Shown in pieces: positions 7,931 to 59,321 of a DNA stretch of 64,000 bases. The position numbers were made by a program, and so were the translations under genes. The notes beneath the pieces are model-generated. The model searched no databases. It saw only the letters and a list, made by a program, of their open reading frames with translations, and was not told where the DNA came from. The DNA comes from Diplonema japonicum. Lineage: Eukaryota > Protista > Euglenozoa: Diplonemea. The stretch covers positions 372,001-436,000 of the forward strand of contig OZ025674.1 in NCBI GenBank assembly GCA_964019335.1. Direction: 5' to 3'. The first letter of the stretch is position 1, and every line of letters starts with the position of its first letter.

Positions 7931-9833
7931 GCTGCCTACACCAGGCGATGCGTCACCACATTCCCTGAAGTCCTACCCCTCTCCTACGCGGACGACCTAT
8001 ACCTCTTCTCTAGGATCTCGGAGAAGGCGGTCCAGAGTTCCATACTCTTGCTGGACGAGCTCTGCCGCTTGACGAACATGTCGGTACACCCGGGGAAAAC
8101 TAAGGCCTTTAGCACCAAGAAGGGGTACAGAAGCAGGCTGGCGATGAGGGGCACCTTATTCGATACGGTGAAAAGCGTAACTATGTTGGGGTGTACGGTG
8201 TGCCTGCAGCCCACCAGGACGAAGAACACAAGGATCGCCACGGCGCTGGATGCTGTCGACAGGCTCACAGTGACCCAAATCACGAGAACGCGTAAGGCCC
8301 AACTGATAGAAGACTGCATCCTACCTGCGGCGCTCTACGGAGTGCTCTACACACCACCCACGGACTCGCTCTTGGACTCCCTCAGGAAGAAGATTACCTC
8401 TTGCATATGGGGCCCACACAACCCAACACGCTCGTCAGGCGCCCTCCTCGGGGTGGCTTTCAAAGGACACAGGCTGGACCCGTACTCAGCAGCCGCATAC
8501 CGCAGGATCACAACGTTTGCGCGGATGATGAGGAGCGACGGTGAGTCCAGTTCACTCGTCAGGGCGTGCAGAGACGGCTACAAGGAGGCCGCCCGGAACG
8601 GAAACCCCCTCGCCCCGCGCGGGATACTCGGACAGACCCACGAGCTGCTGGAGGAACTAGGGTCCAGCTGGGCGCATTTCGCGCGGCAATGGGTCCCCCT
8701 AGAGCCTGGGGCACTGAAGCATGAGGTCAGGAAGCTCCTGAAGGTCCACCTGCGAGCGAACCTCGTGGAGAGCAGACCCTCCTTTCAGGGGACGGGCGAC
8801 ATCGACGAAGTGGCAACCAACGGGCTACACCTGCACCTGGCGAACCGCAACCCTCCCAAAGCACGAAGGGTCCTGCAAGTGATAACTGGGGCTGTTTTCC
8901 CGTTCCACCCCAAGATTATCAACGACACGGTCGGGGGGCGGACGAAATGCATGGGCTGCGACGCTACTTTCGACATTTCGGAACACACGGCGAGACTCCT
9001 GGAGCACACCCTCTGGGACTGTCAGGCGCACGAGCACATCAGGACAGCTTCCGAGACGCGGGCAGCGCTGTGCACACAACGTAACCAGTGGCCCCGGTGC
9101 ACGCAACTGCACGGCATCGCGACAGTGGGACTCGGGCTGGACACTGCCGAGTTGCAGCTGATGATGGCGGAGATCACTGGTAGCTTACAACTCACCTTTG
9201 CACGGAAAAAGACGATGGACTTCAGCGTTCACCTGTGGAACAGGCCTTTCGAGAAGGGGAGTTTGCTCAAGCCACGGTCACTGAGGTGGTACTACGACAA
9301 TGGTTTGAGGCAACAGTGCCTCCCACGGCTCATCCCGCACGTCATCCGATGGCTCTCTGCCCTTCACTGGGGCACGACAGGTGGACAGGTCTCCAGGCTT
9401 GAGCTGGCCATAGACTTCATTGCCACGGTGGGACTCTCACCTTGTGAAGAGGGTGAGGACATCCAAGTGAGCGCGCGTGTAATAGGCCGGGTGATAACGG
9501 CACTAGAACGCATCCACACCAGTAAGGGCATAGCGCCCCTCATCCCAGCTGCGTCAGTAGTTTCTGTCCACTCCCTGCGCACGTTGGGTTACTACAACAG
9601 CTCCGTAAGGGGCTACTCCTCTAGACCGGTATTCGCCTCCCCGGTGACCCGCCACATCCTTGAGAAACAACTGTACAACTATTGTGTCCTTACCAACTCG
9701 GTTGAGGGTTTTATACCTAAGGTACCGAGGAGGGTGAACGAGGGGCCGAAGGCCACACCACAGCAGAAAGGTTCGATCAAGAGATAGATTGAGACTCTTC
9801 AGGCGTCCTGCCACATACCGCAGGTACCCTTAA
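7931..9833 (+). mobile_element. 5'-truncated non-LTR retrotransposon (LINE lineage A)
   Basis: RT YADD motif, RT thumb region, CxxC...EHxLWxC zinc-binding-like segment and C-terminal ELAIDF domain. The 3' UTR stem-loop ends in TTAA. Confidence 0.88.
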
Positions 9834-9837
9834 ATGT

Positions 9838-9882
<45 letters not shown>

Positions 9883-10476
9883 CTTCTTCCTTGCGTCCTC
9901 ATCCCTCTCCCCCCTGGTTTTTCTTGATTTGTTGTCACCACTTCTCCATTTCCCCCTCACCACTGCATCCGCGATGCCCCCATATTCTTATCCTTCTTAT
10001 CCTTCTTGCGTTCTTCTTCTTCTTCTTTTTTTTTTTTTTTTTCCTTTTTTTTTTCTTCTTTTCTTTTTCATATGGTCCATTTTTCGGTTTTTTTTTCTTT
10101 TTTTTTTGTCCTGGTTTTTTTTTCTTTATTCTTTTTAAAAAAAGATTTAAAGAAAAAAAAAAAAAAAAAGGTCTCAGACTATTTACAATGCTGCCCCCCC
10201 CCCCCCCCCCCCCCTTCCATTTGAAATTTTCATTCATCCAAAAGAAATATAGATTTTCCTTTTTTTTTTCTTCTTCTTTCTCTCAGGGACAAAAAAAAAA
10301 ATACCGAAAAGCAGACCTCATACCACATATTTATTGCTAAGGGTCAACCACCCCACCTACCGCTTCCTGCATTACAGCACACAGGGTTGGGGAGAGGGGG
10401 AGAGAGGGAAGGATCTTTTTATTAAAAAAGAAAAAAAAGAAAAAGAGGAAAAAAAAAAAAAAAAAAGAATACCAAC

Positions 10477-30288: not shown

Positions 30289-31756
30289 CGGAGCGACGTA
30301 CGCTGAGCTGTCTGAAGACCTGCTGAAAAGACTTAGGACGGCGGCTGCGAAGGCCTTGTGGGGCCCGCACTTTACGATGAGGAACCCGATTGCCCTACTC
30401 AGCGTAGCGCTACCTGGCCACACAGCCCTACCTGAAGCGAAAGTTTGCTACACCGCGATCAACTGCATCGTGAGAGAGGGGAGAGGGTCGGAGGAGCTAT
30501 GGAGCCGAATCAAGAAGATAGCTCAGATATATGAAGATACGGAGCTACCAGCAGTGGGGCCAGTGGGAACGGCCGTACGCAGGTGGCTACCGCTAGTAGA
30601 GAAGAAGTGGCAGTTCATGGAGGGCCTGTACGAGAAGTCGGCGCACGAGAGGAAGCACCAGGTGAGGGAGGTGCTGAGACCTGCTATCATGAAACAACTC
30701 GTAAGCTGTCGACCAACGTTTGAGGACGCAGAGAAGGGGGCACATCCTCTTACGAACAGCATGTGGAGAAAAACACTGGCCAGACACCCGCTAAGTGCTT
30801 TCAGAACGAGGAGGGTCATCTGTGGAGCGATCTTCACGGTACACCCAAAAGCATGGAGCAAGAAGCTTGATGTGGCAGACAAGCTCACATTTGATGTCTG
30901 CGACCACCAGGCGGAGACGACGGAGCAGATCACAGAGCACGCGCTGTGGGAGTGTGCCCCTGCGAGACAAGCGCAGCAGGAAAGTGTGTACGCGGAGGTC
31001 AAAAGAGAAGGGCTGCCGAAAGCAACGGCGCTACACGGTGTAGTGGTGAGAGGAACGGGAGCGGAAGTGCAGAAACAAGCGCGACTGGTGCAGAGCTACC
31101 TGGTGCGAGTGGTGGCGTTGCGTGACAGTAGAGCAGCGGAGAGGACGGTGCATGCTATAAGACCATATCCTTGGAAAGAGACGACCGGAACAAGATGCCC
31201 GGTACCGACGGAGGAGATGCTTGTTGCGCACGGAGCAACGGGTGAGATACTGAAAAAGCAGTTGAAACATGTGCTACCCTGGCTGCAAGGTCTGAGGTGG
31301 TACCTAGGATCGAAGAAGACGTCAATCACCACGATGGAGCTGGCAATTGATTTTGAGATGACGACCGGTATATCCTTATACGGGGAACATGGGGAGAGCA
31401 GTCTGTTGGAGAGAAAAGCCGCACGTCTGCGGTACATCCTCAATAGAGTGCAAGCATGTGCGGCAAAGGGCAACAAAAGCGGCTTCCCGGCAAGAAGGAT
31501 GACCAGAGTACACTCCCTGAGTACCTGGGCGCACCAGCGATGCATGGCTACGACAAGAGACCCTTGTTCTCGTCAACCCAAACAGCCCCCTATTTGGAGG
31601 GACTGCGACCGATGTTCTTAGCGCAGATGCCGTCCATGACGGACAGGCAAACCCCGACGGCCGGCACCAGGATGCAACCGCAGAATGGTGACAGGCACGT
31701 GTAGGATCCCCCGTCCACGGTGGGCACCAACCAGCGCACCGCAAAAATAGATCGAG
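30289..31756 (+). mobile_element. 5'-truncated LINE (lineage C)
   Basis: Homologous to the post-RT region of lineages A and B (LWG...R, EHALWEC, WLxxLRW, ELAIDF, VHSL). Frameshift near 31520, stop at 31704. Confidence 0.87.
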
Positions 31757-32416
31757 TTTTTTTTTTTTTCCCCATTAATTAAAAAAAATACAAAAATGTT
31801 GTGTCTAAAAAAAAAAAAAAAGAAAAGCCCATCCCTTGGTTTTTGCCTTGACCGAGAGTAAAAAAGAAATAGAAATGGGAAGGGGGGAAAAGAAAATAAA
31901 TGAAATATGGCTCTTTCCGGGTCAGTTTAACAGAAAAGAGAACACCTTTTTTTAATCCGTTTCCCCACGGGGAATCTTTTAAAAGAAGATGAAGGGGGGA
32001 AAAAAAAAAAAATGTGGAAGAAAAAAAGAAAACGGTAAATTCACTCAAGTGAATTTTTAATAGGTTCCCCATTTTGGTATTGCGGTAGAAAAATGCACTT
32101 TAGAACGTGGAATTTTTCGAACCCAGAAAGGAAAAAAAAAAAAAAAAAAAAAAAACGCGGGAAAAAAAAATAAATGTCCGATTTATATTTATTCCCTTGG
32201 GCGTAGCCCTTTTAGAAAGGACTTTTTTTTCCTTTTCCCCCCTTCTGCTGACCCCCCCTCATTTTTTTTTTTTCCCCTGTCTACTTCCCTTTTTTTTCTT
32301 TGTCCTCTCTCCCAATTTTTTTTTTGTACTAATTTTCTTTTCTTCTTTTTCCCCCCCAAACACCAAGACAAACCTCCCAATTTTTTTTATAGGTAAAAAA
32401 AAAAAAAAAAAAAAAA

Positions 32417-45922: not shown

Positions 45923-47290
45923 ATGTCAGAAAACATCAAAAGCGAACAAACCATAAGCCACAAGGATAGGTTCAAGCGGAACACGGAAAAGCTTAACACC
46001 ACCGAGAAGCAAGAGGTGACACAAGAACTATCACAGGTTGAGAATGAGAAGCCTGAAGAAGAACCAGTCCGAGAACCTGTCTCCGCTCCTAAGGGTAGAA
46101 AGTCGCTAATGCAAAGCAACGATGACGAACCAGAGGAGGAGGCTGAGATGAGCATATGGAAAGCTGCCTTAGTAAGCATAGTGGCGGTCATCATAGCAAT
46201 CGACGATGAGTGGATCTGGATCCCGGGCAGCATTTACGGTTGCTTCTACTATCTGTACAAACGCGTCAGGAACTTCGGTGAGGAGGTGCTGTCGTGCCCT
46301 CCCGAGCCCCTCATTTCTGCTACCATAGCCGCGGGAAGCGCCACTGTTATATCACCCTCTATGGCACAGGTTACAAAGTCGCTTCTCGGTCAGCATGCGA
46401 AAGGCATCCGCACCACCGCGAAGGCTATGTTCTTATCACCTGGTGGTATTGTGTCCCCTTTTACATGGGGTCTCAGAATGACGTTCTTCACGTACTTCCT
46501 CCGCCATGCTATCGAGGACACGCACCAAGTGGAAGACGGATGGTACCACAGAACATCAAGCTTGCTTGCAGGTGGTGCTGTCGCAGAGATGGGCGCCAGG
46601 ACGATAGTTGCTCCGGCTGCAAAAATCGTCGATCAGACCAGGAAAACAGGCGAATCCCCATGGGCAGCATGCCGGTCGATATTTAAAGGAAAAGGCAGCA
46701 TTGGGTTCTGGCACGGGATGGCGCCTTACAGGGTGGAGGTCCCTCATATGGCGTTGTTACTGACCACGTACTCCATGCTGCGGGGGCAGGCTGCGAAACA
46801 CTTCACACATCAGAAAAACGAAACGTTCTCAGATGTTGTGTATCACATCCCAGTCGACTTGGTATGTGGGGGTGTGGCAGGGGCTGTTGCGCACACTGCT
46901 ACGCACGCCTGGCGTTGCTCCACAGAGGCTTCAAGGGGGAACGAGTCGCATTTTTCGCGTAGTTCTGTTCTCTCGACCTGTCCCTTGGTGGCCCGCCACT
47001 CTTCGATCCCTCTCATGCAGGCTCTTGCGTTGCGTGTTCCGCACACTGCTCTCATTTTCGGTATTTACGGGACTGTGCTTTCCTCCATTTCGTCGAAGTT
47101 CCCGCATGCTGGGACTACAGGATGGGGGGAGCATGACGTGCAGCGTGCGACGCAATATGGTGGAGGCATGCGGAACACGAAGGAGGAGGAACAGTCTTTC
47201 TGGGCATTCTTCGGGGTGCGTATCTCACAGCAGCAGACTTATGATGCGCATAGGTATAAGTCGAACAAGAACGACAAGACGGAAAACTAG
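45923..47290 (+). CDS. Divergent mitochondrial carrier (SLC25)-like protein with N-terminal extension
   Basis: Three-fold pattern with Gly/Ala-rich odd helices (AAGSA, AGGAVA, CGGVAGAVA) and a RSIFKGKGSIGFWHG matrix-helix motif. The Px[DE]xx[KR] signatures are degenerate. Confidence 0.65.
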   Translation: MSENIKSEQTISHKDRFKRNTEKLNTTEKQEVTQELSQVENEKPEEEPVREPVSAPKGRKSLMQSNDDEPEEEAEMSIWKAALVSIVAVIIAIDDEWIWIPGSIYGCFYYLYKRVRNFGEEVLSCPPEPLISATIAAGSATVISPSMAQVTKSLLGQHAKGIRTTAKAMFLSPGGIVSPFTWGLRMTFFTYFLRHAIEDTHQVEDGWYHRTSSLLAGGAVAEMGARTIVAPAAKIVDQTRKTGESPWAACRSIFKGKGSIGFWHGMAPYRVEVPHMALLLTTYSMLRGQAAKHFTHQKNETFSDVVYHIPVDLVCGGVAGAVAHTATHAWRCSTEASRGNESHFSRSSVLSTCPLVARHSSIPLMQALALRVPHTALIFGIYGTVLSSISSKFPHAGTTGWGEHDVQRATQYGGGMRNTKEEEQSFWAFFGVRISQQQTYDAHRYKSNKNDKTEN

Positions 47291-47333
47291 GTTTTTTTTT
47301 TTTTTTTCTCTCTTTTTTTTCTTCTTTTTTTCT

Positions 47334-47512
47334 TGTGGTCGGGAAAAGTACTCTCCATACCCGCTAGTGGGAGCCAATGAAGGGTGCTACTTGCCTGAAG
47401 AGATCAGCACTTGGAGGAGTCGCAAGATTAGGTCGAAACTGAGAGATACCTACTGACCATACCCCCTCCCTTTTTAGGGCATGCGGCCTTCGCTTTAGGG
47501 TTTGCATGTTAA
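47334..47512 (+). ncRNA. Repeat unit 1 with a permuted hammerhead ribozyme (core 47390-47440, predicted cleavage after C47421)
   Basis: CTGAAGA 47395-47401, stem II GATC/GGTC, GAAA 47435-47438, GTC 47419-47421 and stem I CTTGC/GCAAG. Confidence 0.75.
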
Positions 47513-47539
47513 TTTGAGTTTCTTTTTTTTTTTTTTTCA

Positions 47540-47789
47540 GTCCACGGTAGGCACCAGCGCACCGCAAAAATAGATCGAGGTTCTTTTTTTTTTTTTTTTT
47601 TTGTGGTCGGGAAAAGTACTCTCCAACCTGCTGGGACACTAGTATGAGCCATTGAAGGGTGCCTCTCGCCTGATGAGGTCAGCACCTGGAGGGGTCGCGA
47701 GATTGACCGAAACTGAGAGATACCTAGTACTGACCATACCTTCCCTTTTTCGGGCATGCGGCTTTCGTCTCAGGGAGCTTGCATGTTAA
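47540..47789 (+). ncRNA. Repeat unit 2: LINE-C 3' UTR segment plus permuted hammerhead ribozyme (core 47664-47714, predicted cleavage after C47696)
   Basis: CTGATGA 47670-47676, stem II GGTCA/TGACC, GAAA 47709-47712, GTC 47694-47696 and stem I TCTCGC/GCGAGA. Segment 47540-47579 matches 31713-31756. Confidence 0.8.
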
Positions 47790-48208
47790 TTTGAATTTTT
47801 TTTTTTCATTCCGTTCCCCTTGAAGAGTTGCTGCTCTCGTTACTTTGTGGTCACCTTTTTTTGTTTTTCCGATTTTCTTCCCCCCCCCCCCCCCGGCAAG
47901 TCGCGGAATGCAGAAGAAGCTACACCTTGGCCGTGGTGTCCTCTGTATCTCAAGTAGACAGTTCTTACCAACATTGGACTCCTGTATTTTACCCCCCCCC
48001 CCCCATCCCTTTTTTTCTTTCGTTCAACATTTTTTTCAAGAATTTTTTAAAAAAAAAAAACACGAAACAAAAAAAAGAAAAAGTGTAAAAAAAAAAAATA
48101 TATATATATACCGTATCAATACTACTCTCCCCCCCCCCCCCTTTGTTGTCAAACCATCTCTTGCAGGTTCAGACAGACTTCTCCGTTACAGGCAAAAAAA
48201 AAAAAAAA

Positions 48209-53402: not shown

Positions 53403-55478
53403 ATGAGACACCGACGGATAATACTCATAGTTGCCCTTACTATCCTCCCAATAGCAATTATAACCCAAGCCACAAGTGGCTTCTCTGTGGACTCCGACGT
53501 ACCACGCGTGGAAAAAATAGACACAAGGACAAAGCTACCAAAGTACCTTAAAAGAACGCGATGGATCACAATGGGGCCGAGGACAGAACCTCCGGAGACG
53601 GCAGCTCCAACAAGAGGATGCGTCATCGAAGACGGAACATGGTACGAGGGCTCCTTCATAAGCGAGACAAAGGGAATCCAAGACACCACAGAGTGCAGCG
53701 AACTATGTCTAGAAACCGACGAATGTGGCAGCTTCAACTACCGACACGGCGACCTCGCATGCCATTTATTCAGACCAGGCTCACGAAACCCTCACAAAGA
53801 CCCCTCCCATTCATCTGGAACATGCACCCACGGGTTAAAAATAAGAAAGCAGTCTCAAATAACACCGCTTCCTATAAAACGAACTCACAACGGGTGCGAA
53901 ATAAAAATCGGAATGCGAGGAACAGGGGATGTCCTGACACAAAAGGATTTGAAGGTGTATTCAACAGGTGGTTGTATAGAAGCATGTTTGTACACAGAAA
54001 AGTGTATTGGTGCAGTGTTTCAATATTGGGACAATGGGTGTAAGCTTCTCTCGAAGCTAGATTCCGTTCAAGAGGATAAGCAACAAGACCTCGCCGACTG
54101 TTCCGCAGCACGGAAGAAACCGAAGCGAAAGAACACCGTACTTCCAAACAGCTCGGAACGTGACCTAACCGTGCTTCCATTGACAGAACCTCATCTATGC
54201 AAAAACCCTCAATACCCGGAGTGGAGAGCCAGGGTGAAGACCATCCCGTGCCGTTATAAACCCTCAGCTTCCTTCACTCCGGTTTTACCTGAAACATACG
54301 AACCAAAATGGTATTGTGACAAGCTAGGCAACACATTGACCCCGTACAAGCTTCCCCAAAGGTACACTGAAGACGATCTTGTCGTTGGGATCTACTCTGG
54401 TGAAGGGCTGCTTTACTCCCGCGCGACAGTCTGCGAGGACACATGGCTGTCGGTGATCAAAAGAAAGTCCATTTACATTGCTGGCGACGAGAGGTCTGTT
54501 TACGGTCTTAAAGGGACACCCTCGTTGTCCATCACGTCAATGCGCAACGCTGACAAGAGAATCCGCCCCGAGTCAGAGATGACAAACGCGCACCTGTTGC
54601 AGCTGCACGGTTTGAGGGATATGTACCTGAAGAACCCGAACGCGAAGTGGTTCATCATCGTCGGTGACGACACCTACATCGACGTTGATTTCATGTTGAA
54701 AGGGTTGGAAGTATACGACTCGGATGAGGTGCTGTGGCTGGCACCGGTGTCGTATCGTGAGACTTACGGGAGATCTGACGCATGGAAATGGATCAAAAAA
54801 GTTTCCTCGCTGAAAGATTTTAAATCTCTATTCAAAGAGTCATGGACCGAAAGACACAGCGACCAACAGTTCGAATGGACCACCGGTGCCACAGCATGGG
54901 TTTTGTCAAACCCTGCCGCGAAATTATATTCGGATAACCTCCTTCCTATAATGGACGCTATCGATGTTTCAAAGATTTGCTACTGCCCCGATCTGGTGAC
55001 AGGAATGGTGTTGTCAGTGCTTGGGCTCAAAATAACCACGTTTAACCATATGGTCATGCACCCCTATGCGGTCGATAGTGTTGAGGTTGATTATACGAAA
55101 AAAGAGGAGGTTACTCTTTATCATTATGTCCAGCCGTCCAGGATGATCAGCCTGTCGCAGCGTGCACAGCACGCCAAGCTCGATCGGCTTATCTCGCTTC
55201 AACGTAAGGCACCCATCCGCGATTTTTACAATATGTTGTACACGTCGCATCAGGGTGCTGTGTCCCGACGTACGCTGCAGCTTCAGCACTTCAACGCTAC
55301 GGCGCCTTCCCCCGCCTTGCTTCAACCCCTCGACCCTATGCTGCACGATGATATCTTCATTTCTTCCCTGCGTGTTTTCATCGACACCCATCACTCCCTG
55401 CTCAGGGAGTGGCAAACAGCCGTTCTGCGTGCTGTGCTGTCCAAACGACATGTCCCTGTTTACGATATCCCTGTTTAG
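53403..55478 (+). CDS. Type II membrane Fringe-like (GT31) glycosyltransferase with two PAN/apple domains
   Basis: N-terminal signal anchor, two CxxxC...C PAN patterns and the KWFIIVGDDTY DxD-type motif. Confidence 0.8.
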   Translation: MRHRRIILIVALTILPIAIITQATSGFSVDSDVPRVEKIDTRTKLPKYLKRTRWITMGPRTEPPETAAPTRGCVIEDGTWYEGSFISETKGIQDTTECSELCLETDECGSFNYRHGDLACHLFRPGSRNPHKDPSHSSGTCTHGLKIRKQSQITPLPIKRTHNGCEIKIGMRGTGDVLTQKDLKVYSTGGCIEACLYTEKCIGAVFQYWDNGCKLLSKLDSVQEDKQQDLADCSAARKKPKRKNTVLPNSSERDLTVLPLTEPHLCKNPQYPEWRARVKTIPCRYKPSASFTPVLPETYEPKWYCDKLGNTLTPYKLPQRYTEDDLVVGIYSGEGLLYSRATVCEDTWLSVIKRKSIYIAGDERSVYGLKGTPSLSITSMRNADKRIRPESEMTNAHLLQLHGLRDMYLKNPNAKWFIIVGDDTYIDVDFMLKGLEVYDSDEVLWLAPVSYRETYGRSDAWKWIKKVSSLKDFKSLFKESWTERHSDQQFEWTTGATAWVLSNPAAKLYSDNLLPIMDAIDVSKICYCPDLVTGMVLSVLGLKITTFNHMVMHPYAVDSVEVDYTKKEEVTLYHYVQPSRMISLSQRAQHAKLDRLISLQRKAPIRDFYNMLYTSHQGAVSRRTLQLQHFNATAPSPALLQPLDPMLHDDIFISSLRVFIDTHHSLLREWQTAVLRAVLSKRHVPVYDIPV

Positions 55479-55592
55479 CTTTTTTTTATTTTTTTTTCTT
55501 TTTGGATATTGTTGCTTTCTTTTTTTTTTTTGTTGTTGTTGTTTCACCATATCCACAACAGGGCACTGGGGAGGCGGGGGGAGGGGTGCAGC

Positions 55593-58500
55593 ATGAGCGA
55601 TTCGCTTTCGCCTCTTTACAAAATGAGCAGCTTCAGTGGGGCGGGGGTTGCCCCGCTGATGAGCCTAGACTATGGCCCGTCCGTGTCGTCGCCTGTCATC
55701 CCGTCGCTCGAGCGCATGACGTCTTTCGACGATCCGATGGTCTCGTTGCGACGGTCTGTAGACACGACCCTATCCTCGCCGAGGGTGCGTCTGGGTGGGG
55801 TCAACTCACCAGCAGAGTACCCCCTCAGTATTCACGGTTCTGAGGTCCATGAGTCCGTCGACCCTCTCACAACCGTAGCAGCACAGCAGCGAGCACTGTA
55901 CGAATCCCGCATGGCCGCCTCTGCACACGAACGCCAAGGACGCAAGCGATACAAAGAAGAGAAACGACGCCAGAAGCAAGACCAGGAGGTGTCCAGGCTT
56001 CAGGAACTGGCGCGCTCCATCGAAATCGACAAGTCGCGTGTTGCCAAGATGACCTTCGACCACATGGTGAAGACAGGGCAGGAGGCGGAGGAGCTGCGCC
56101 GAGAGAAGTGGATGCGCCAAGACGAAGATCGAGAGATACTCAGGGGGAAGCGGGAGAACGAAAGGTGGCGCGAGTTCCAAGAAGAGCGTGAAAAGATGGT
56201 CGATAAAATACAACAACTAGAGAACACAAGCAGACGGAATGATGACGAACGCGACCGTCGGCTGCACAAGCAGTCCGTCGACAAGCTGGAGGAGCTGCAA
56301 CGGCAGAGCGTTAACGAAATGCAGCGCCTGCGCGTTGAGCTGGCGAAGGAGAAGGAGTTCCGCATCGACGCGATCAGGAAGGTGGAGGAGACACAGCGCA
56401 TGATTTCCGACAAGTTAGACTTCGGGCAACTGGAATCCGCACAGGTCTCAGTGCGGGAGAACACCATCCTCAGCAGCGAGCTCAACAACCTGAAGCAGGA
56501 CAAGACTACCTTGCAGCGGCAGGCTGACGATCTGAAAGACGAACTGCGCAACGCGATAAGGACGAAAGACAAGGAAATCCAGAAGCTGCACGACGAAGTC
56601 GCAGGTGAGAAACGGGCACGCATGGGCATGCAAGAAAGGCTGGAAAGAGAGAAACGGGACTTGGAGGACACTCTGCACTCAAAGCAGCGAGACTTCGAGA
56701 CACGCGAATGGAAATTGCAGCAGGAAAACGAGATGGAAAAGAGAAATAAACAAACGCGAGAGGAGGACCTGAACAGGGAGATCGGCCAACTAAGAAGGGA
56801 AATGGAGGAACGGAGTTACTCCAGGTCCAGCAGGGACGTCGAGAAGAACGACATCATCCGTGAGAGGGAAAACCTGCAGCAGCAGCTGAGAACGAGTCAG
56901 GATGAGGCTGCTAGCAAACTAAAAGAGGAACGCGATAAGTCTTCAAAGGAGCTCATGAGCCTTCAGAGGGAACTCATCACACTGAAGGAGCGTGAGACAG
57001 CCACGCAAAGTAGACTAGACATGGAGAAGGAACGCTACACAGCCCTGGTGGGAGACACCACGGAGTTGAAGACTAGCAAGCACGAGTTCGAGGAAAAGCT
57101 GCGTACGCTTACTGAGCAGTTGCAGGAGGGGAAGTGGGAGCTGCAGAAGTGCAAAGACGAAAAAACGCAACTGGAGAGATCAAAGGTAGAGATTGAAGCA
57201 CAGCTGAAAGCAAAGGATGCAGAGCTGAGAAGCAAGGACACACTTCTAGTAAGCACAAGCAGCAAGGTGAAGATGACACAGGAGACCAACCAGGAGAAGG
57301 AGACAACCCTATTCAGACAGATCGAAGATCTGAAACGCGAACTCGAGGAGCAGAAGGGCACCAACAAGACTCTCAACACTGCTGTCGACATGGACAAGTC
57401 GCAGCTGGATGAAGCCAACCAGAAGATCTCAAAGCTGCAAGAGACGAGCACGAAACTGGAAGTTTCCTTGAACACCGCAAAGAACGATGTTGCCGAGAAG
57501 GAGAGAGAACTCACAAAGGTGTCGACAGAACTGCGCCAGCGCAACACTGACATGGCGCAGTTGGTGAACATCAACAAACAGGAGGTGGCTGAGGCGAAGG
57601 AGCAGAACGTTCGGGAAATGCAGCAGAAGGTGTCAGAGTTCAACAGAAGGGAAACTGACTTGAAAGCAAAACTAGAGTCACTAACAGAGGAGTACGCTGC
57701 AACCAGGACAAAAGGTGAGAAAGACAAAGACAAGGAAGCCAACAGATTGCGTGCTGAGATTGACTCGCTCACGGACAAGGAAAGGTCCCTCACTGACAAA
57801 GTGGAGGATTTAGAGAGGACGCAGATCAGGCTGAAAGCTGATGCTGAAAAGGAAAGGAAGGACGCTTTTGGGAAGAATAGAGAGCTGAACTTGCTAACGA
57901 TGGAAGCCAGAGAAGCCAAGATAAGGCTTGAGGTGCATGAAAGCGAGAATGTGGACCTCATGTGGCACTACCACAGCTTCATCACAACCCTGAACAGGGC
58001 GGTGTACGACCAGCGCTCTCAGGGGAACAACGCGAAGACACGCCTACAGGACGACATGGACAGGCTGCGCCTAGACCTTGACAGGGAGAAAGAGAAGGCC
58101 CACCTGCTGGAAAAGGATGTCAATGAGCTGCAGTACAAGCTGCGCGAAGCACATGAGGACAAAACAGTTGAGAAGAGGATACGTGACCTGCGTGCGGAGC
58201 TGGACAGCGAGAGCAGGGAACGAAGCAACGCGGAGAAGGAGGTCCGAAGCTTGAAGCATGACATAGAGATGGAGCGCTCGACAAAAAGCACTAGCAGCCA
58301 GAACCAGCTGATGGAGGCAAACAAGCTGCGGAAAGAGCTGGAAGACGAAGTCAATGACCTCAAAACACAGTTAAAGGAGCGCAGGCCTGTAGCTGCTGCA
58401 GCTGCAGCGGCACCTGCCCCTGCCCCTGCCCCTGCACCGAGTCAGAATAGCTCATCGCAGAAGGACATCCCGCAGTGGCTTGTGATCCGTGCCAGGGCAG

Positions 58501-59321
58501 ACCTGTGCGAGGACCGCCGTGAGTCACTTAGCATTGAGAAGAGCAACGGGCTGTACGTGCTGGTTCCCGGTGGCTTGTGTGAAGCAGTGAAAGACGCAGC
58601 AGGGACACGCGCTTCGTGGGCATCTTCGAACTGCATGTGGGAACGGCAGCTGCCCTCGCAGAGGTGGCTGTACTCGTCACGACGCGGTGCTTGGAAGGTC
58701 ACAGACGGCATCCGCAGCGACGGAAGCTTCAACCTGGCAGCAGAAGTGGACGATGGGCTGTCCTTCGAGCACCTCACGAAGGACAAGGACCCGCACAACG
58801 GGATCATGCCGCAGGACTTCAAACGCTGGTGCAACGGGGTCACAGTGGAGGTGCCGCCAGAGGAACTGATGGTGACCGCAGACAAAACGGCAAGCAGCGG
58901 GAAATACAAGATCATCCCTGCAAAGGTGGTGAACGGGTGGCCGGTGTGGCGCATGGAAAGGGCGAGCAGGTGGCTGTACAACACGCAAGATGGGGCGTGG
59001 CAGATCACAGACTCGGAAGGCGACTTCTCAAAAGGCGGGGGCCTACTACTGGGGGCAAGACACAACGGTATCCTGCCCAACCTGGTCACGTGGGATGCGG
59101 GTGTCACTGTCTCTTTGGTATGGAAAAAGAATATTTCCTATTCTTTTGTAAATCCACACAGTTCGCTGTTGGCGAGAACGTTCGCATGCGCGACAGGGAG
59201 TCGGAAGAGTGGCAGCGTGGCATCGTAGATGCTATCCACACCAACGGGAGGCCCCTTGTGAAGGTCAACGAGTACTCGAAGGGCTTCCAATGGTTGTTTG
59301 TTGAGAAAGTGGTATGCAAAA

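What the first reader, a model, noticed from the sequence alone, without database searches (positions are those of the whole stretch)
47421..47789. The ribozyme unit is attached to a LINE 3' UTR and arranged in tandem: possible retrozyme-like system
Seen: 47540-47579 matches the sequence just after the stop of LINE lineage C (31713-31756) and runs through a T tract into hammerhead copy 2. Each unit ends with a CATGC/GCATG hairpin and TTAA, like LINE lineages A and B. The two predicted cleavage sites are 275 nt apart. Established: ribozymes of R2, RTE and ingi/L1Tc LINEs are HDV-like and 5'-terminal, while hammerheads go with Penelope-like elements and retrozymes. Inference: either an APE-RT LINE carrying a 3' UTR hammerhead, or a SINE/retrozyme mobilised by lineage C. 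Double cleavage would release a 275-nt monomer able to circularise. Caveat: the LINE-C copy at 31756 itself stops before any ribozyme.
Basis: partly seen in the sequence, partly recalled or inferred. Interest (0 to 1): 0.82.

Follow-up and report, generated by a model that had tools for sequence, protein, structure and literature searches.

The report
Adjacent SINE copies, not a retrozyme
Two copies of a short jumping element that carries a rewired hammerhead ribozyme, plus a 40-base stub of an unrelated LINE, landed one after another in the same T-rich spacer; this is a pile-up of separate insertions, not a LINE-linked or retrozyme-like tandem system.

Summary
The sequence facts hold. Window 47540-47579 is a 40-nt copy of the LINE-C tail. 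Both units end in a CATGC...GCATG hairpin plus TTAA. The two GUC sites lie 275 nt apart.

The interpretation does not hold.
- The unit is a dispersed, roughly 190-290-nt SINE-like retroposon with a fixed 3' end and variable 5' truncation.
- All 30 LINE-C 3' ends read stop at ...GATCGAG plus T(n). Of 39 exact LINE-C tails in the 62.5-Mb genome, only the window's is followed by the SINE. Short LINE-C stubs are common.
- In a census of 91 SINE tails, only about 5 loci hold a second copy nearby, at irregular spacings (62 to 479 nt) and never as arrays.
- Units 1 and 2 are 81% identical and belong to different subfamilies.

The best reading is three independent insertions into one T tract.

The ribozyme core is real as a structure. 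It is wired in the "type CSG" hammerhead order (Eckert et al. 2023). On 36 copies, 92.8% of stem positions pair and both-sided changes occur in stems I and II. Cleavage is untested, and no copy starts at the cut site.

The scan already described this hammerhead SINE on other DNA of this genome, which is probably Diplonema japonicum.

The parts
47276..47334 (+). T-rich tract just after the stop codon of the mitochondrial-carrier ORF (45923-47290). It is the insertion target and 5' flank of unit 1.
   Evidence: SINE flanks are T-rich genome-wide: 66% T in the 12 nt before the 5' end and 77% T in the 12 nt after the 3' end.
47335..47518 (+). SINE copy 1, short form (GTGGTCGGG ... GCATGTTAATTTGAG). 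It belongs to the CUUGC/GCAAG, GAUCA/AGAUC, GGCCTTCGCTTTAGGG subfamily.
   Evidence: 90.7% identical to the long-form copy used as reference. Subfamily markers are visible.
47389..47440 (+). Hammerhead core 1 in type-CSG order. Stem I 47389-94 pairs with 47422-27. CUGAAGA is at 47395-401. Stem II 47402-06 pairs with 47430-34. Stem III 47418-20 pairs with 47438-40. GAA is at 47435-37. The predicted cut lies between 47421 and 47422.
   Evidence: Read. Pair counts on 36 copies are. In this copy stem I is 5 bp (A/A at pair 6) and stem II has one U-G pair.
47519..47539 (+). Left copy of the probable target-site duplication of the LINE-C stub (TTTC + T15), followed by 2 extra bases (CA).
   Evidence: It matches GTTC + T19 at 47580-47602. 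The sequence is low-complexity, so this is suggestive only.
47540..47579 (+). 40-nt 5'-truncated stub of the LINE-C 3' end.
   Evidence: Comparable stubs of about 28-70 nt occur at 6 other loci.
47580..47602 (+). Right copy of the probable target-site duplication (GTTC + T19). It is also the 5' flank of unit 2.
   Evidence: Other LINE-C copies run straight from GATCGAG into T(n).
47603..47795 (+). SINE copy 2, short form. It belongs to the CUCGC/GCGAG, GGUCA/UGACC, GGCTTTCGTCTCAGGGAGC subfamily.
   Evidence: 94% identical to the closest genomic copy.
47664..47714 (+). Hammerhead core 2 in type-CSG order. Stem I 47664-69 pairs with 47697-702. CUGAUGA is at 47670-76. Stem II 47677-81 pairs with 47704-08. 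Stem III 47693-95 pairs with 47712-14 (one G-U pair). GAA is at 47709-11. The predicted cut lies between 47696 and 47697.
47755..47795 (+). 3'-terminal hairpin plus UUAAUUUGA, the minimal retrotransposed module of the SINE.
   Evidence: 27 of 91 census copies consist of this tail only, preceded by a T tract.
31713..31756 (+). 3' end of the full-length LINE-C copy in the window, followed by T13.

Best explanation
The locus is a pile-up of three separate target-primed reverse-transcription insertions in one T-rich intergenic tract of a + strand polycistronic gene cluster. The three pieces are SINE copy 1, SINE copy 2 from a different subfamily, and a 40-nt dead-on-arrival stub of LINE-C between them.

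Retroposons of this genome insert next to or within T tracts, and in the sampled copies each element is followed by one. The T-rich tail behind an earlier insert is therefore a good target for the next insert, and the polarity of the tract would set a common orientation. This mechanism is inferred from the flanks. It would produce same-strand 'trains' of elements separated by T runs.

The SINE carries a hammerhead core in the non-circular type-CSG order. That core is a feature of the SINE, not of LINE-C. The 275-nt spacing is an accident of this locus.
For: (1) The unit is a dispersed family. There are at least 266 candidates and 92 exact tails.

(2) It has a fixed 3' end and variable 5' ends. 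In 91 census copies, starts cluster at reference positions 22-23, 86-88 and 233, with scattered truncations; 27 copies are tail-only.

(3) Clear non-homopolymer target-site duplications abut both ends in L030 (about 25 nt), L015/L110 (22 nt), L088 (16 nt) and L025 (8 nt).

(4) LINE-C does not run into the SINE. All 30 LINE-C 3' ends read are followed by T6-T39 and then unique DNA. The pattern 'LINE-C tail, 5-35 nt, SINE start' occurs exactly once genome-wide, in the window, out of 39 exact LINE-C tails.

(5) Short LINE-C stubs are ordinary. Six further stubs of about 28-70 nt, most of them preceded by T-rich sequence, were read.

(6) The same kind of chain occurs elsewhere. In L088 a tail identical in type to the window's RT-linked tail at 9796-9840 (LINE-A) is followed by T18 and then a SINE tail; L108 shows a diverged version of the same chain.

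(7) Units 1 and 2 differ at subfamily-diagnostic positions in stem I, stem II and the tail loop.

(8) Neighbouring copies are rare and irregular: window 275 nt, C12/C30 duplicate 477-479 nt, C9 62 nt, C51 82 nt.

(9) The stub is flanked by TTTC+T15 on the left and GTTC+T19 on the right.
Against: Most flanks are plain T runs. A longest-common-substring test for target-site duplication does not beat mismatched flank pairs (7.8 vs 7.2 nt). The duplications around the three window elements are therefore only suggestive.

Adjacent same-strand SINE pairs are about ten times more frequent than random placement would give (my estimate from copy number and genome size). I attribute this to T-tract targeting but have not shown it.

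A single chimeric retrocopy made by template switching cannot be strictly excluded.

The autonomous partner of the SINE was not identified.
Confidence: 0.8

Rival explanations
1. One chimeric retrocopy. During a single TPRT event the reverse transcriptase copied a SINE RNA, jumped to the 3' end of a LINE-C RNA, copied 40 nt, and then jumped to a second SINE RNA. The T runs would come from U-rich 3' ends of the templates.
For: Template-switch chimeras do occur in this genome. L144 joins the body of another repeat family directly to the SINE's terminal hairpin. Every element in the chain has the same orientation.
Against: The stub is flanked by near-identical TTC+T15 and TTC+T19, as expected for its own target-site duplication. 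In the proven chimera (L144) the junction has no T run. The event would need two jumps involving two different SINE subfamilies. Either way, the result is a one-off and not an evolved unit.
Confidence: 0.1
2. Retrozyme-like system. Tandem hammerhead units are the functional form. Double self-cleavage of a co-transcript releases a 275-nt RNA that is circularised and serves as the retrotransposition template.
For: Both cores look intact. The units lie on the transcribed strand between two + strand ORFs. Cleavage products with 5'-OH and 2',3'-cyclic phosphate ends are ligase substrates in metazoan retrozymes (PMC7229834).
Against: The family is dispersed as single copies with defined ends, 5' truncations and target-site duplications. 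Only about 5 of 91 loci have a neighbouring copy, at 62-479 nt, and there are no arrays. The two units are 81% identical and come from different subfamilies, with a foreign LINE stub between them. The 275-nt RNA is no more stable than shuffled sequence (z -0.16). None of the 91 copies begins at the cleavage site.
Confidence: 0.05
3. LINE-C mobilises the SINE, and the juxtaposition reflects this partnership.
For: LINE-C is young: many copies are 99-100% identical over the last 197 nt. The long-form SINE subfamily is also young, at 97-99.6% identity. Both end at T tracts, so their integration machinery may be similar.
Against: The 3' ends share no sequence or hairpin. The juxtaposition is unique. 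The 27 tail-only SINE copies suggest that the SINE's own terminal hairpin is the retained and recognised module.
Confidence: 0.15

Closest known systems
Type-CSG hammerhead ribozymes (Eckert, Friedrich, Weinberg & Weinberg, NAR 2023; PMC10085705)
   Same: The block order is the same: C (stem I strand, CUGAnGA, stem II strand), then S (stem III strand, cleavage site, stem I strand), then G (stem II strand, GAAA, stem III strand). All invariant core bases are present. A short linker joins stem I to stem II. The core is pseudoknotted, with no three-way junction.
   Different: The two published examples come from metagenomic DNA of unknown organisms and were shown to cleave in vitro. Here the motif sits in a multi-copy SINE of a eukaryote. 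It has more covariation support, but cleavage is untested.
Hammerhead-bearing SINE-like elements and metazoan non-LTR retrozymes (Cervera & de la Pena, NAR 2020; PMC7229834)
   Same: A short non-coding mobile element carries a hammerhead and is transcribed with its surroundings.
   Different: Retrozymes are uniform head-to-tail repeats (dimers up to 62-mers) with type I hammerheads, and they are expressed as circRNAs. This family is dispersed as single copies with target-site duplications and 5' truncation, and its hammerhead has a different strand order. The window's 'dimer' is two unrelated insertions.
Stringent LINE/SINE pairs that share a 3' stem-loop; RIME/ingi and NARTc/L1Tc in trypanosomatids (PMC3185411, PMC4035085)
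   Same: It is a non-autonomous element in a euglenozoan polycistronic genome. A conserved 3'-terminal hairpin appears to be the minimal mobilised module. Copies show 5' truncation.
   Different: No LINE with the same tail was found. The ribozyme is an internal hammerhead, not a 5'-terminal HDV-like ribozyme. Copies in the sample end at T tracts and have no poly(A) tail.

Membership tests
Component of the LINE-C 3' UTR | The unit is contiguous with the LINE-C 3' end in independent LINE-C copies. | tested here: not met
   0 of 30 LINE-C ends continue into the unit. Only 1 of 39 exact LINE-C tails genome-wide is followed by the SINE start, and that is the window's.
Retrozyme (non-LTR type) | Typical genomic state is head-to-tail tandem repeats of a uniform monomer. 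| tested here: not met
   About 5 of 91 census loci have a second copy within 600 nt, at spacings of 62, 82, 275 and 477-479 nt. Many of these are truncated, and there are no arrays. The window's units are 81% identical and from different subfamilies.
Retrozyme (non-LTR type) | A self-cleaving hammerhead in each monomer. | tested here: inconclusive
   Both units carry a complete core with stems that can pair. Catalysis is untested.
Retrozyme (non-LTR type) | Expression as monomeric linear and circular RNA. | not testable with these tools
   No RNA data are available here. The 275-nt RNA shows no unusual fold stability (z -0.16).
SINE / non-autonomous non-LTR retroposon | Dispersed copies with a fixed 3' end, variable 5' truncation and target-site duplications. 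| tested here: met
   Clear target-site duplications are seen in L030, L015/L110, L088 and L025. Most other flanks are uninformative T runs.
SINE / non-autonomous non-LTR retroposon | A 3' end shared with an autonomous LINE partner. | tested here: inconclusive
   All 92 exact tails belong to SINE copies, SINE stubs or one chimera. The LINE-C tail is unrelated. The RT-linked tail at 9796-9840 has only an analogous hairpin plus TTAAA.
Hammerhead ribozyme, type CSG | Invariant core: CUGAnGA, GAAA, the A15.1-U16.1 pair and a non-G base at the cleavage site. | tested here: met
   Present in both window units. On 36 copies the CUG and the closing GA of the box are invariant, A6 is 90% or more conserved, and most of the variation is at the free position N7.
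Hammerhead ribozyme, type CSG | Stems I, II and III formed in C-S-G strand order and supported by covariation. | tested here: met
   92.8% of cells are paired, against 23-42% when the partners are slid. Both-sided changes occur in stem I (CG/UA, 16 copies) and stem II (GC/AU in 14 copies, UA/AU in 6). The copies are related, so this amounts to about three independent events. The stem I change is also a pair of CpG transitions.
Hammerhead ribozyme, type CSG | Site-specific self-cleavage. | not testable with these tools
Genomic hints point both ways: 0 of 91 copies start at the cut site, while one copy (L152) ends at or within 2 nt after it.
Hammerhead ribozyme, types I/II/III (Rfam models) | A match to the Rfam hammerhead covariance models. 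| tested here: not met
   No hit at gathering score or at E<=10.

The most novel reading that the evidence does not exclude
Chance dimers of this hammerhead SINE, such as the one at 47335-47795, are co-transcribed within the polycistronic precursor. Both type-CSG cores then cut them, releasing a discrete 275-nt RNA that a tRNA-type ligase circularises. That would be a retrozyme caught at its origin in a diplonemid, and the first in vivo activity shown for a non-circularly permuted hammerhead.
Probability: 0.08. Interest if true: 0.75.

Novelty: new variant of a known kind. Interest (0 to 1): 0.3.

Why it matters
The specific claim, a LINE-attached tandem retrozyme-like system, turns out to be an ordinary pile-up of insertions. 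Any model of a LINE/ribozyme partnership should not be built on this locus.

Two things remain of value. First, the element itself is a SINE with a type-CSG hammerhead, present in at least 266 candidate copies in what is probably Diplonema japonicum. That permutation was previously known only from two metagenomic sequences. The scan has already reported this on other DNA of the same genome.

Second, this locus is a ready-made natural dimer on a transcribed strand. A simple read-mapping or RT-PCR test here would show whether the rewired hammerhead cuts in vivo.

The data also document how retroposons of this genome stack up in T tracts.

Tried and rejected
- **Canonical hammerhead wirings.** I tried type I, II and III by hand. 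No stem I or stem III fits, and Rfam finds nothing. I worked out the pseudoknotted order, and an earlier scan note then gave its name, type CSG, which I confirmed in PMC10085705.
- **Opposite orientation.** I considered that the T tracts are poly(A) tails of a minus-strand element. I rejected this because the truncation is at the left end, the right end is constant, and L030 and L025 have target-site duplications without a T tract on the left.
- **Other RNA classes.** A C/D-box snoRNA reading (UGAUGA...CUGA) was rejected because most copies have UGAAGA and there is no abutting terminal stem. A 5S-rRNA-derived head and an HDV-like fold of this region were rejected for lack of any Rfam hit and missing P4/J4-2 elements.
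- **SINE as the 3' end of a longer LINE.** The longest form is only about 285 nt, and its 77-nt head occurs 27 times. The head copies I could place or read are joined to SINE bodies (for example L152), so no LINE carrying this head was seen.
- **Partner LINE by shared tail.** None was found among 92 exact tails. L144 looked promising but is a chimera with another repeat family.
- **Genome-wide target-site-duplication statistic.** It is uninformative because all flanks are T-rich.

Full report
**Observation.**
Two units of about 190 nt lie head to tail: 47335-47518 and 47603-47795.
- They are 81-83% identical.
- Each ends in CATGC...GCATG-TTAA. These are the only two such sites in the window, against 0 expected by chance.
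- Between them lies 47540-47579, a copy of the last 44 nt of the LINE-C element that ends at 31756. It differs by one substitution and a 4-nt deletion. The last 23 nt are identical, with 0 chance matches expected.

**What the unit is.**
A search of the window's own 62.5-Mb assembly found at least 266 candidate copies, and a tail pattern found 92 exact tails. I read 30 loci with flanks and then made a census of 91 tails, each with 600 nt of upstream sequence.
- The right end, ...GCATGTTAATTTGA(G/A), is constant.
- The left end varies. Four copies reach a full long form of about 285 nt, and 12 are truncated long forms. Thirty-one start at GTGGTCGGG, 17 are truncated further in, and 27 consist only of the roughly 45-nt terminal hairpin.
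- Clear non-homopolymer target-site duplications abut the two ends in L030 (about 25 nt), L015/L110 (22 nt), L088 (16 nt) and L025 (8 nt).

This is the signature of a non-autonomous non-LTR retroposon copied from its 3' end, with the + strand as its sense strand. The longest form is only about 285 nt. Its 77-nt head occurs 27 times, and in the copies I could place or read it is joined to a SINE body. The unit is therefore a SINE, not the tail of a LINE.

Flanks are T-rich on both sides: 66% T before the 5' end and 77% T after the 3' end. For that reason a general statistic for target-site duplication is uninformative (7.8 vs 7.2 nt).

**The LINE-C link.**
LINE-C is a young family; many copies are 99-100% identical over their last 197 nt.
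- In all 30 copies read, the element ends at ...AAAAATAGATCGAG, followed by 6 to 39 T and then unique DNA. None runs into the hammerhead unit.
- Genome-wide there are 39 exact LINE-C tails.
- The pattern 'LINE-C tail, 5-35 nt, SINE start' occurs once, in the window.
- Conversely, the window's pair is the only one of the 91 census SINE copies with a LINE-C tail nearby.
- Stubs like the window's are ordinary. Six further LINE-C tails are fragments of about 28-70 nt, most of them preceded by T-rich sequence.
- The window's stub is flanked by TTTC+T15 on the left and GTTC+T19 on the right, a plausible target-site duplication of its own.
- The same kind of chain occurs elsewhere. In L088, a tail of the type seen at the window's RT-linked 9796-9840 end is followed by T18 and a SINE tail; L108 shows a diverged version.
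- The SINE's 3' end shares nothing with the LINE-C 3' end.

**The tandem arrangement.**
Units 1 and 2 differ at subfamily-diagnostic positions. These are stem I (CUUGC/GCAAG vs CUCGC/GCGAG), stem II (GAUCA/AGGUC vs GGUCA/UGACC) and the loop of the tail hairpin. They cannot be a local duplication or a dimeric copy of one template.

Among the 91 census copies, second copies within 600 nt occur at the following loci:
- the window (275 nt);
- C12 and its duplicate on C30 (477-479 nt);
- C9 (a tail stub 62 nt before a full copy);
- C51 (two tails 82 nt apart).

There are no arrays and no constant period. By my own estimate this is more clustering than random placement would give. It fits targeting of T tracts, because the sampled inserts are followed by a T run that can serve as the next target. 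The 275-nt RNA between the two cut sites folds no better than shuffled sequence (z -0.16).

**The ribozyme.**
No canonical type I, II or III wiring fits, and Rfam finds nothing. The strand order is:
1. stem I strand, then CUGAnGA, then stem II strand;
2. 11 nt;
3. stem III strand, then C at the cut site, then stem I strand;
4. 1-3 nt;
5. stem II strand, then GAA, then stem III strand.

This is exactly the 'type CSG' non-circular permutation defined by Eckert et al. 2023. That type is known from two metagenomic sequences that cleave in vitro.

On 36 copies, 92.8% of stem cells pair, against 23-42% with the partners slid. Both-sided changes occur in stem I (CG to UA) and in stem II (GC to AU, and UA to AU). 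The copies are related, so this is about three independent events, and the stem I change is also a pair of CpG transitions.

Cleavage is untested. No census copy begins at the cut site. One copy, L152, ends at or 2 nt after it.

**Organism.**
The assembly size (62.5 Mb) and the longest sequence (1,191,308 nt) match the published Diplonema japonicum YPF1604 assembly, which spans 62.30 Mb with a longest scaffold of 1.19 Mb. All large ORFs of the window lie on the + strand, as expected for a euglenozoan polycistronic cluster. The units sit 45 nt after the stop codon of a mitochondrial-carrier ORF, on the transcribed strand.

**Verdict.**
The locus is a stack of three independent insertions, with a single template-switch chimera as a minor alternative.

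The hammerhead SINE itself is a new variant of a known kind. This scan has already described it on other DNA of the same genome (notes s1-861364, s1-867135, s1-869276, s1-864478).

Noticed in passing
L152 = G000:C101:291380-291980 (a second head copy lies 5.8 kb downstream): A long-form SINE copy whose similarity to the family stops at ...GGAGGAGTCGC|TCTGAAAAGG. That is at or 2 nt after the predicted hammerhead cut site, and unrelated sequence follows. It could be a trace of a cleaved 5' product joined to other RNA, or just a deletion.
   Followed up: partly
L144 = G000:C101:98359-99144; compare L150, L151: The body of another repeat family (at least 124 candidates; normal tail ...CACGCCACCGCGGCGGGCCG...ATAGTGAA + T(n)) is joined directly to the SINE's terminal hairpin. 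This looks like a template-switch chimera.
   Followed up: partly
L031-L060, L153-L160; window 31756-31769 and 9840-9885: LINE-C, the RT-linked tail at 9796-9840 and the SINE are each followed by T runs (6 to about 49 T) on their sense strand, and I saw no poly(A) tail at their 3' ends in the copies read. Where target-site duplications are legible, they are the T-rich target itself.
   Followed up: partly
Census loci L061-L149 (positions relative to L014:1416-1706): SINE 5' ends are not spread evenly. They pile up at three points: reference positions 22-23, 86-88 (GTGGTCGGG) and 233 (the first base of the terminal hairpin). This suggests defined RNA 5' ends or preferred stops of reverse transcription.
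   Followed up: no
L122 = G000:C52:335959-336745: One copy changes the normally invariant hammerhead pair A15.1-U16.1 to G-C on both sides. The pairing is kept but a core base is lost.
   Followed up: no
window 53403-55478 (+): A 691-aa ORF combines PAN/apple domains with a Fringe-like glycosyltransferase domain. The neighbouring 1239-aa ORF (55509-59228) has no Pfam match.
   Followed up: no
whole window: Very long homopolymer runs of A, T and C (up to about 50 nt) fill nearly every intergenic spacer. They dominate any repeat search.
   Followed up: no
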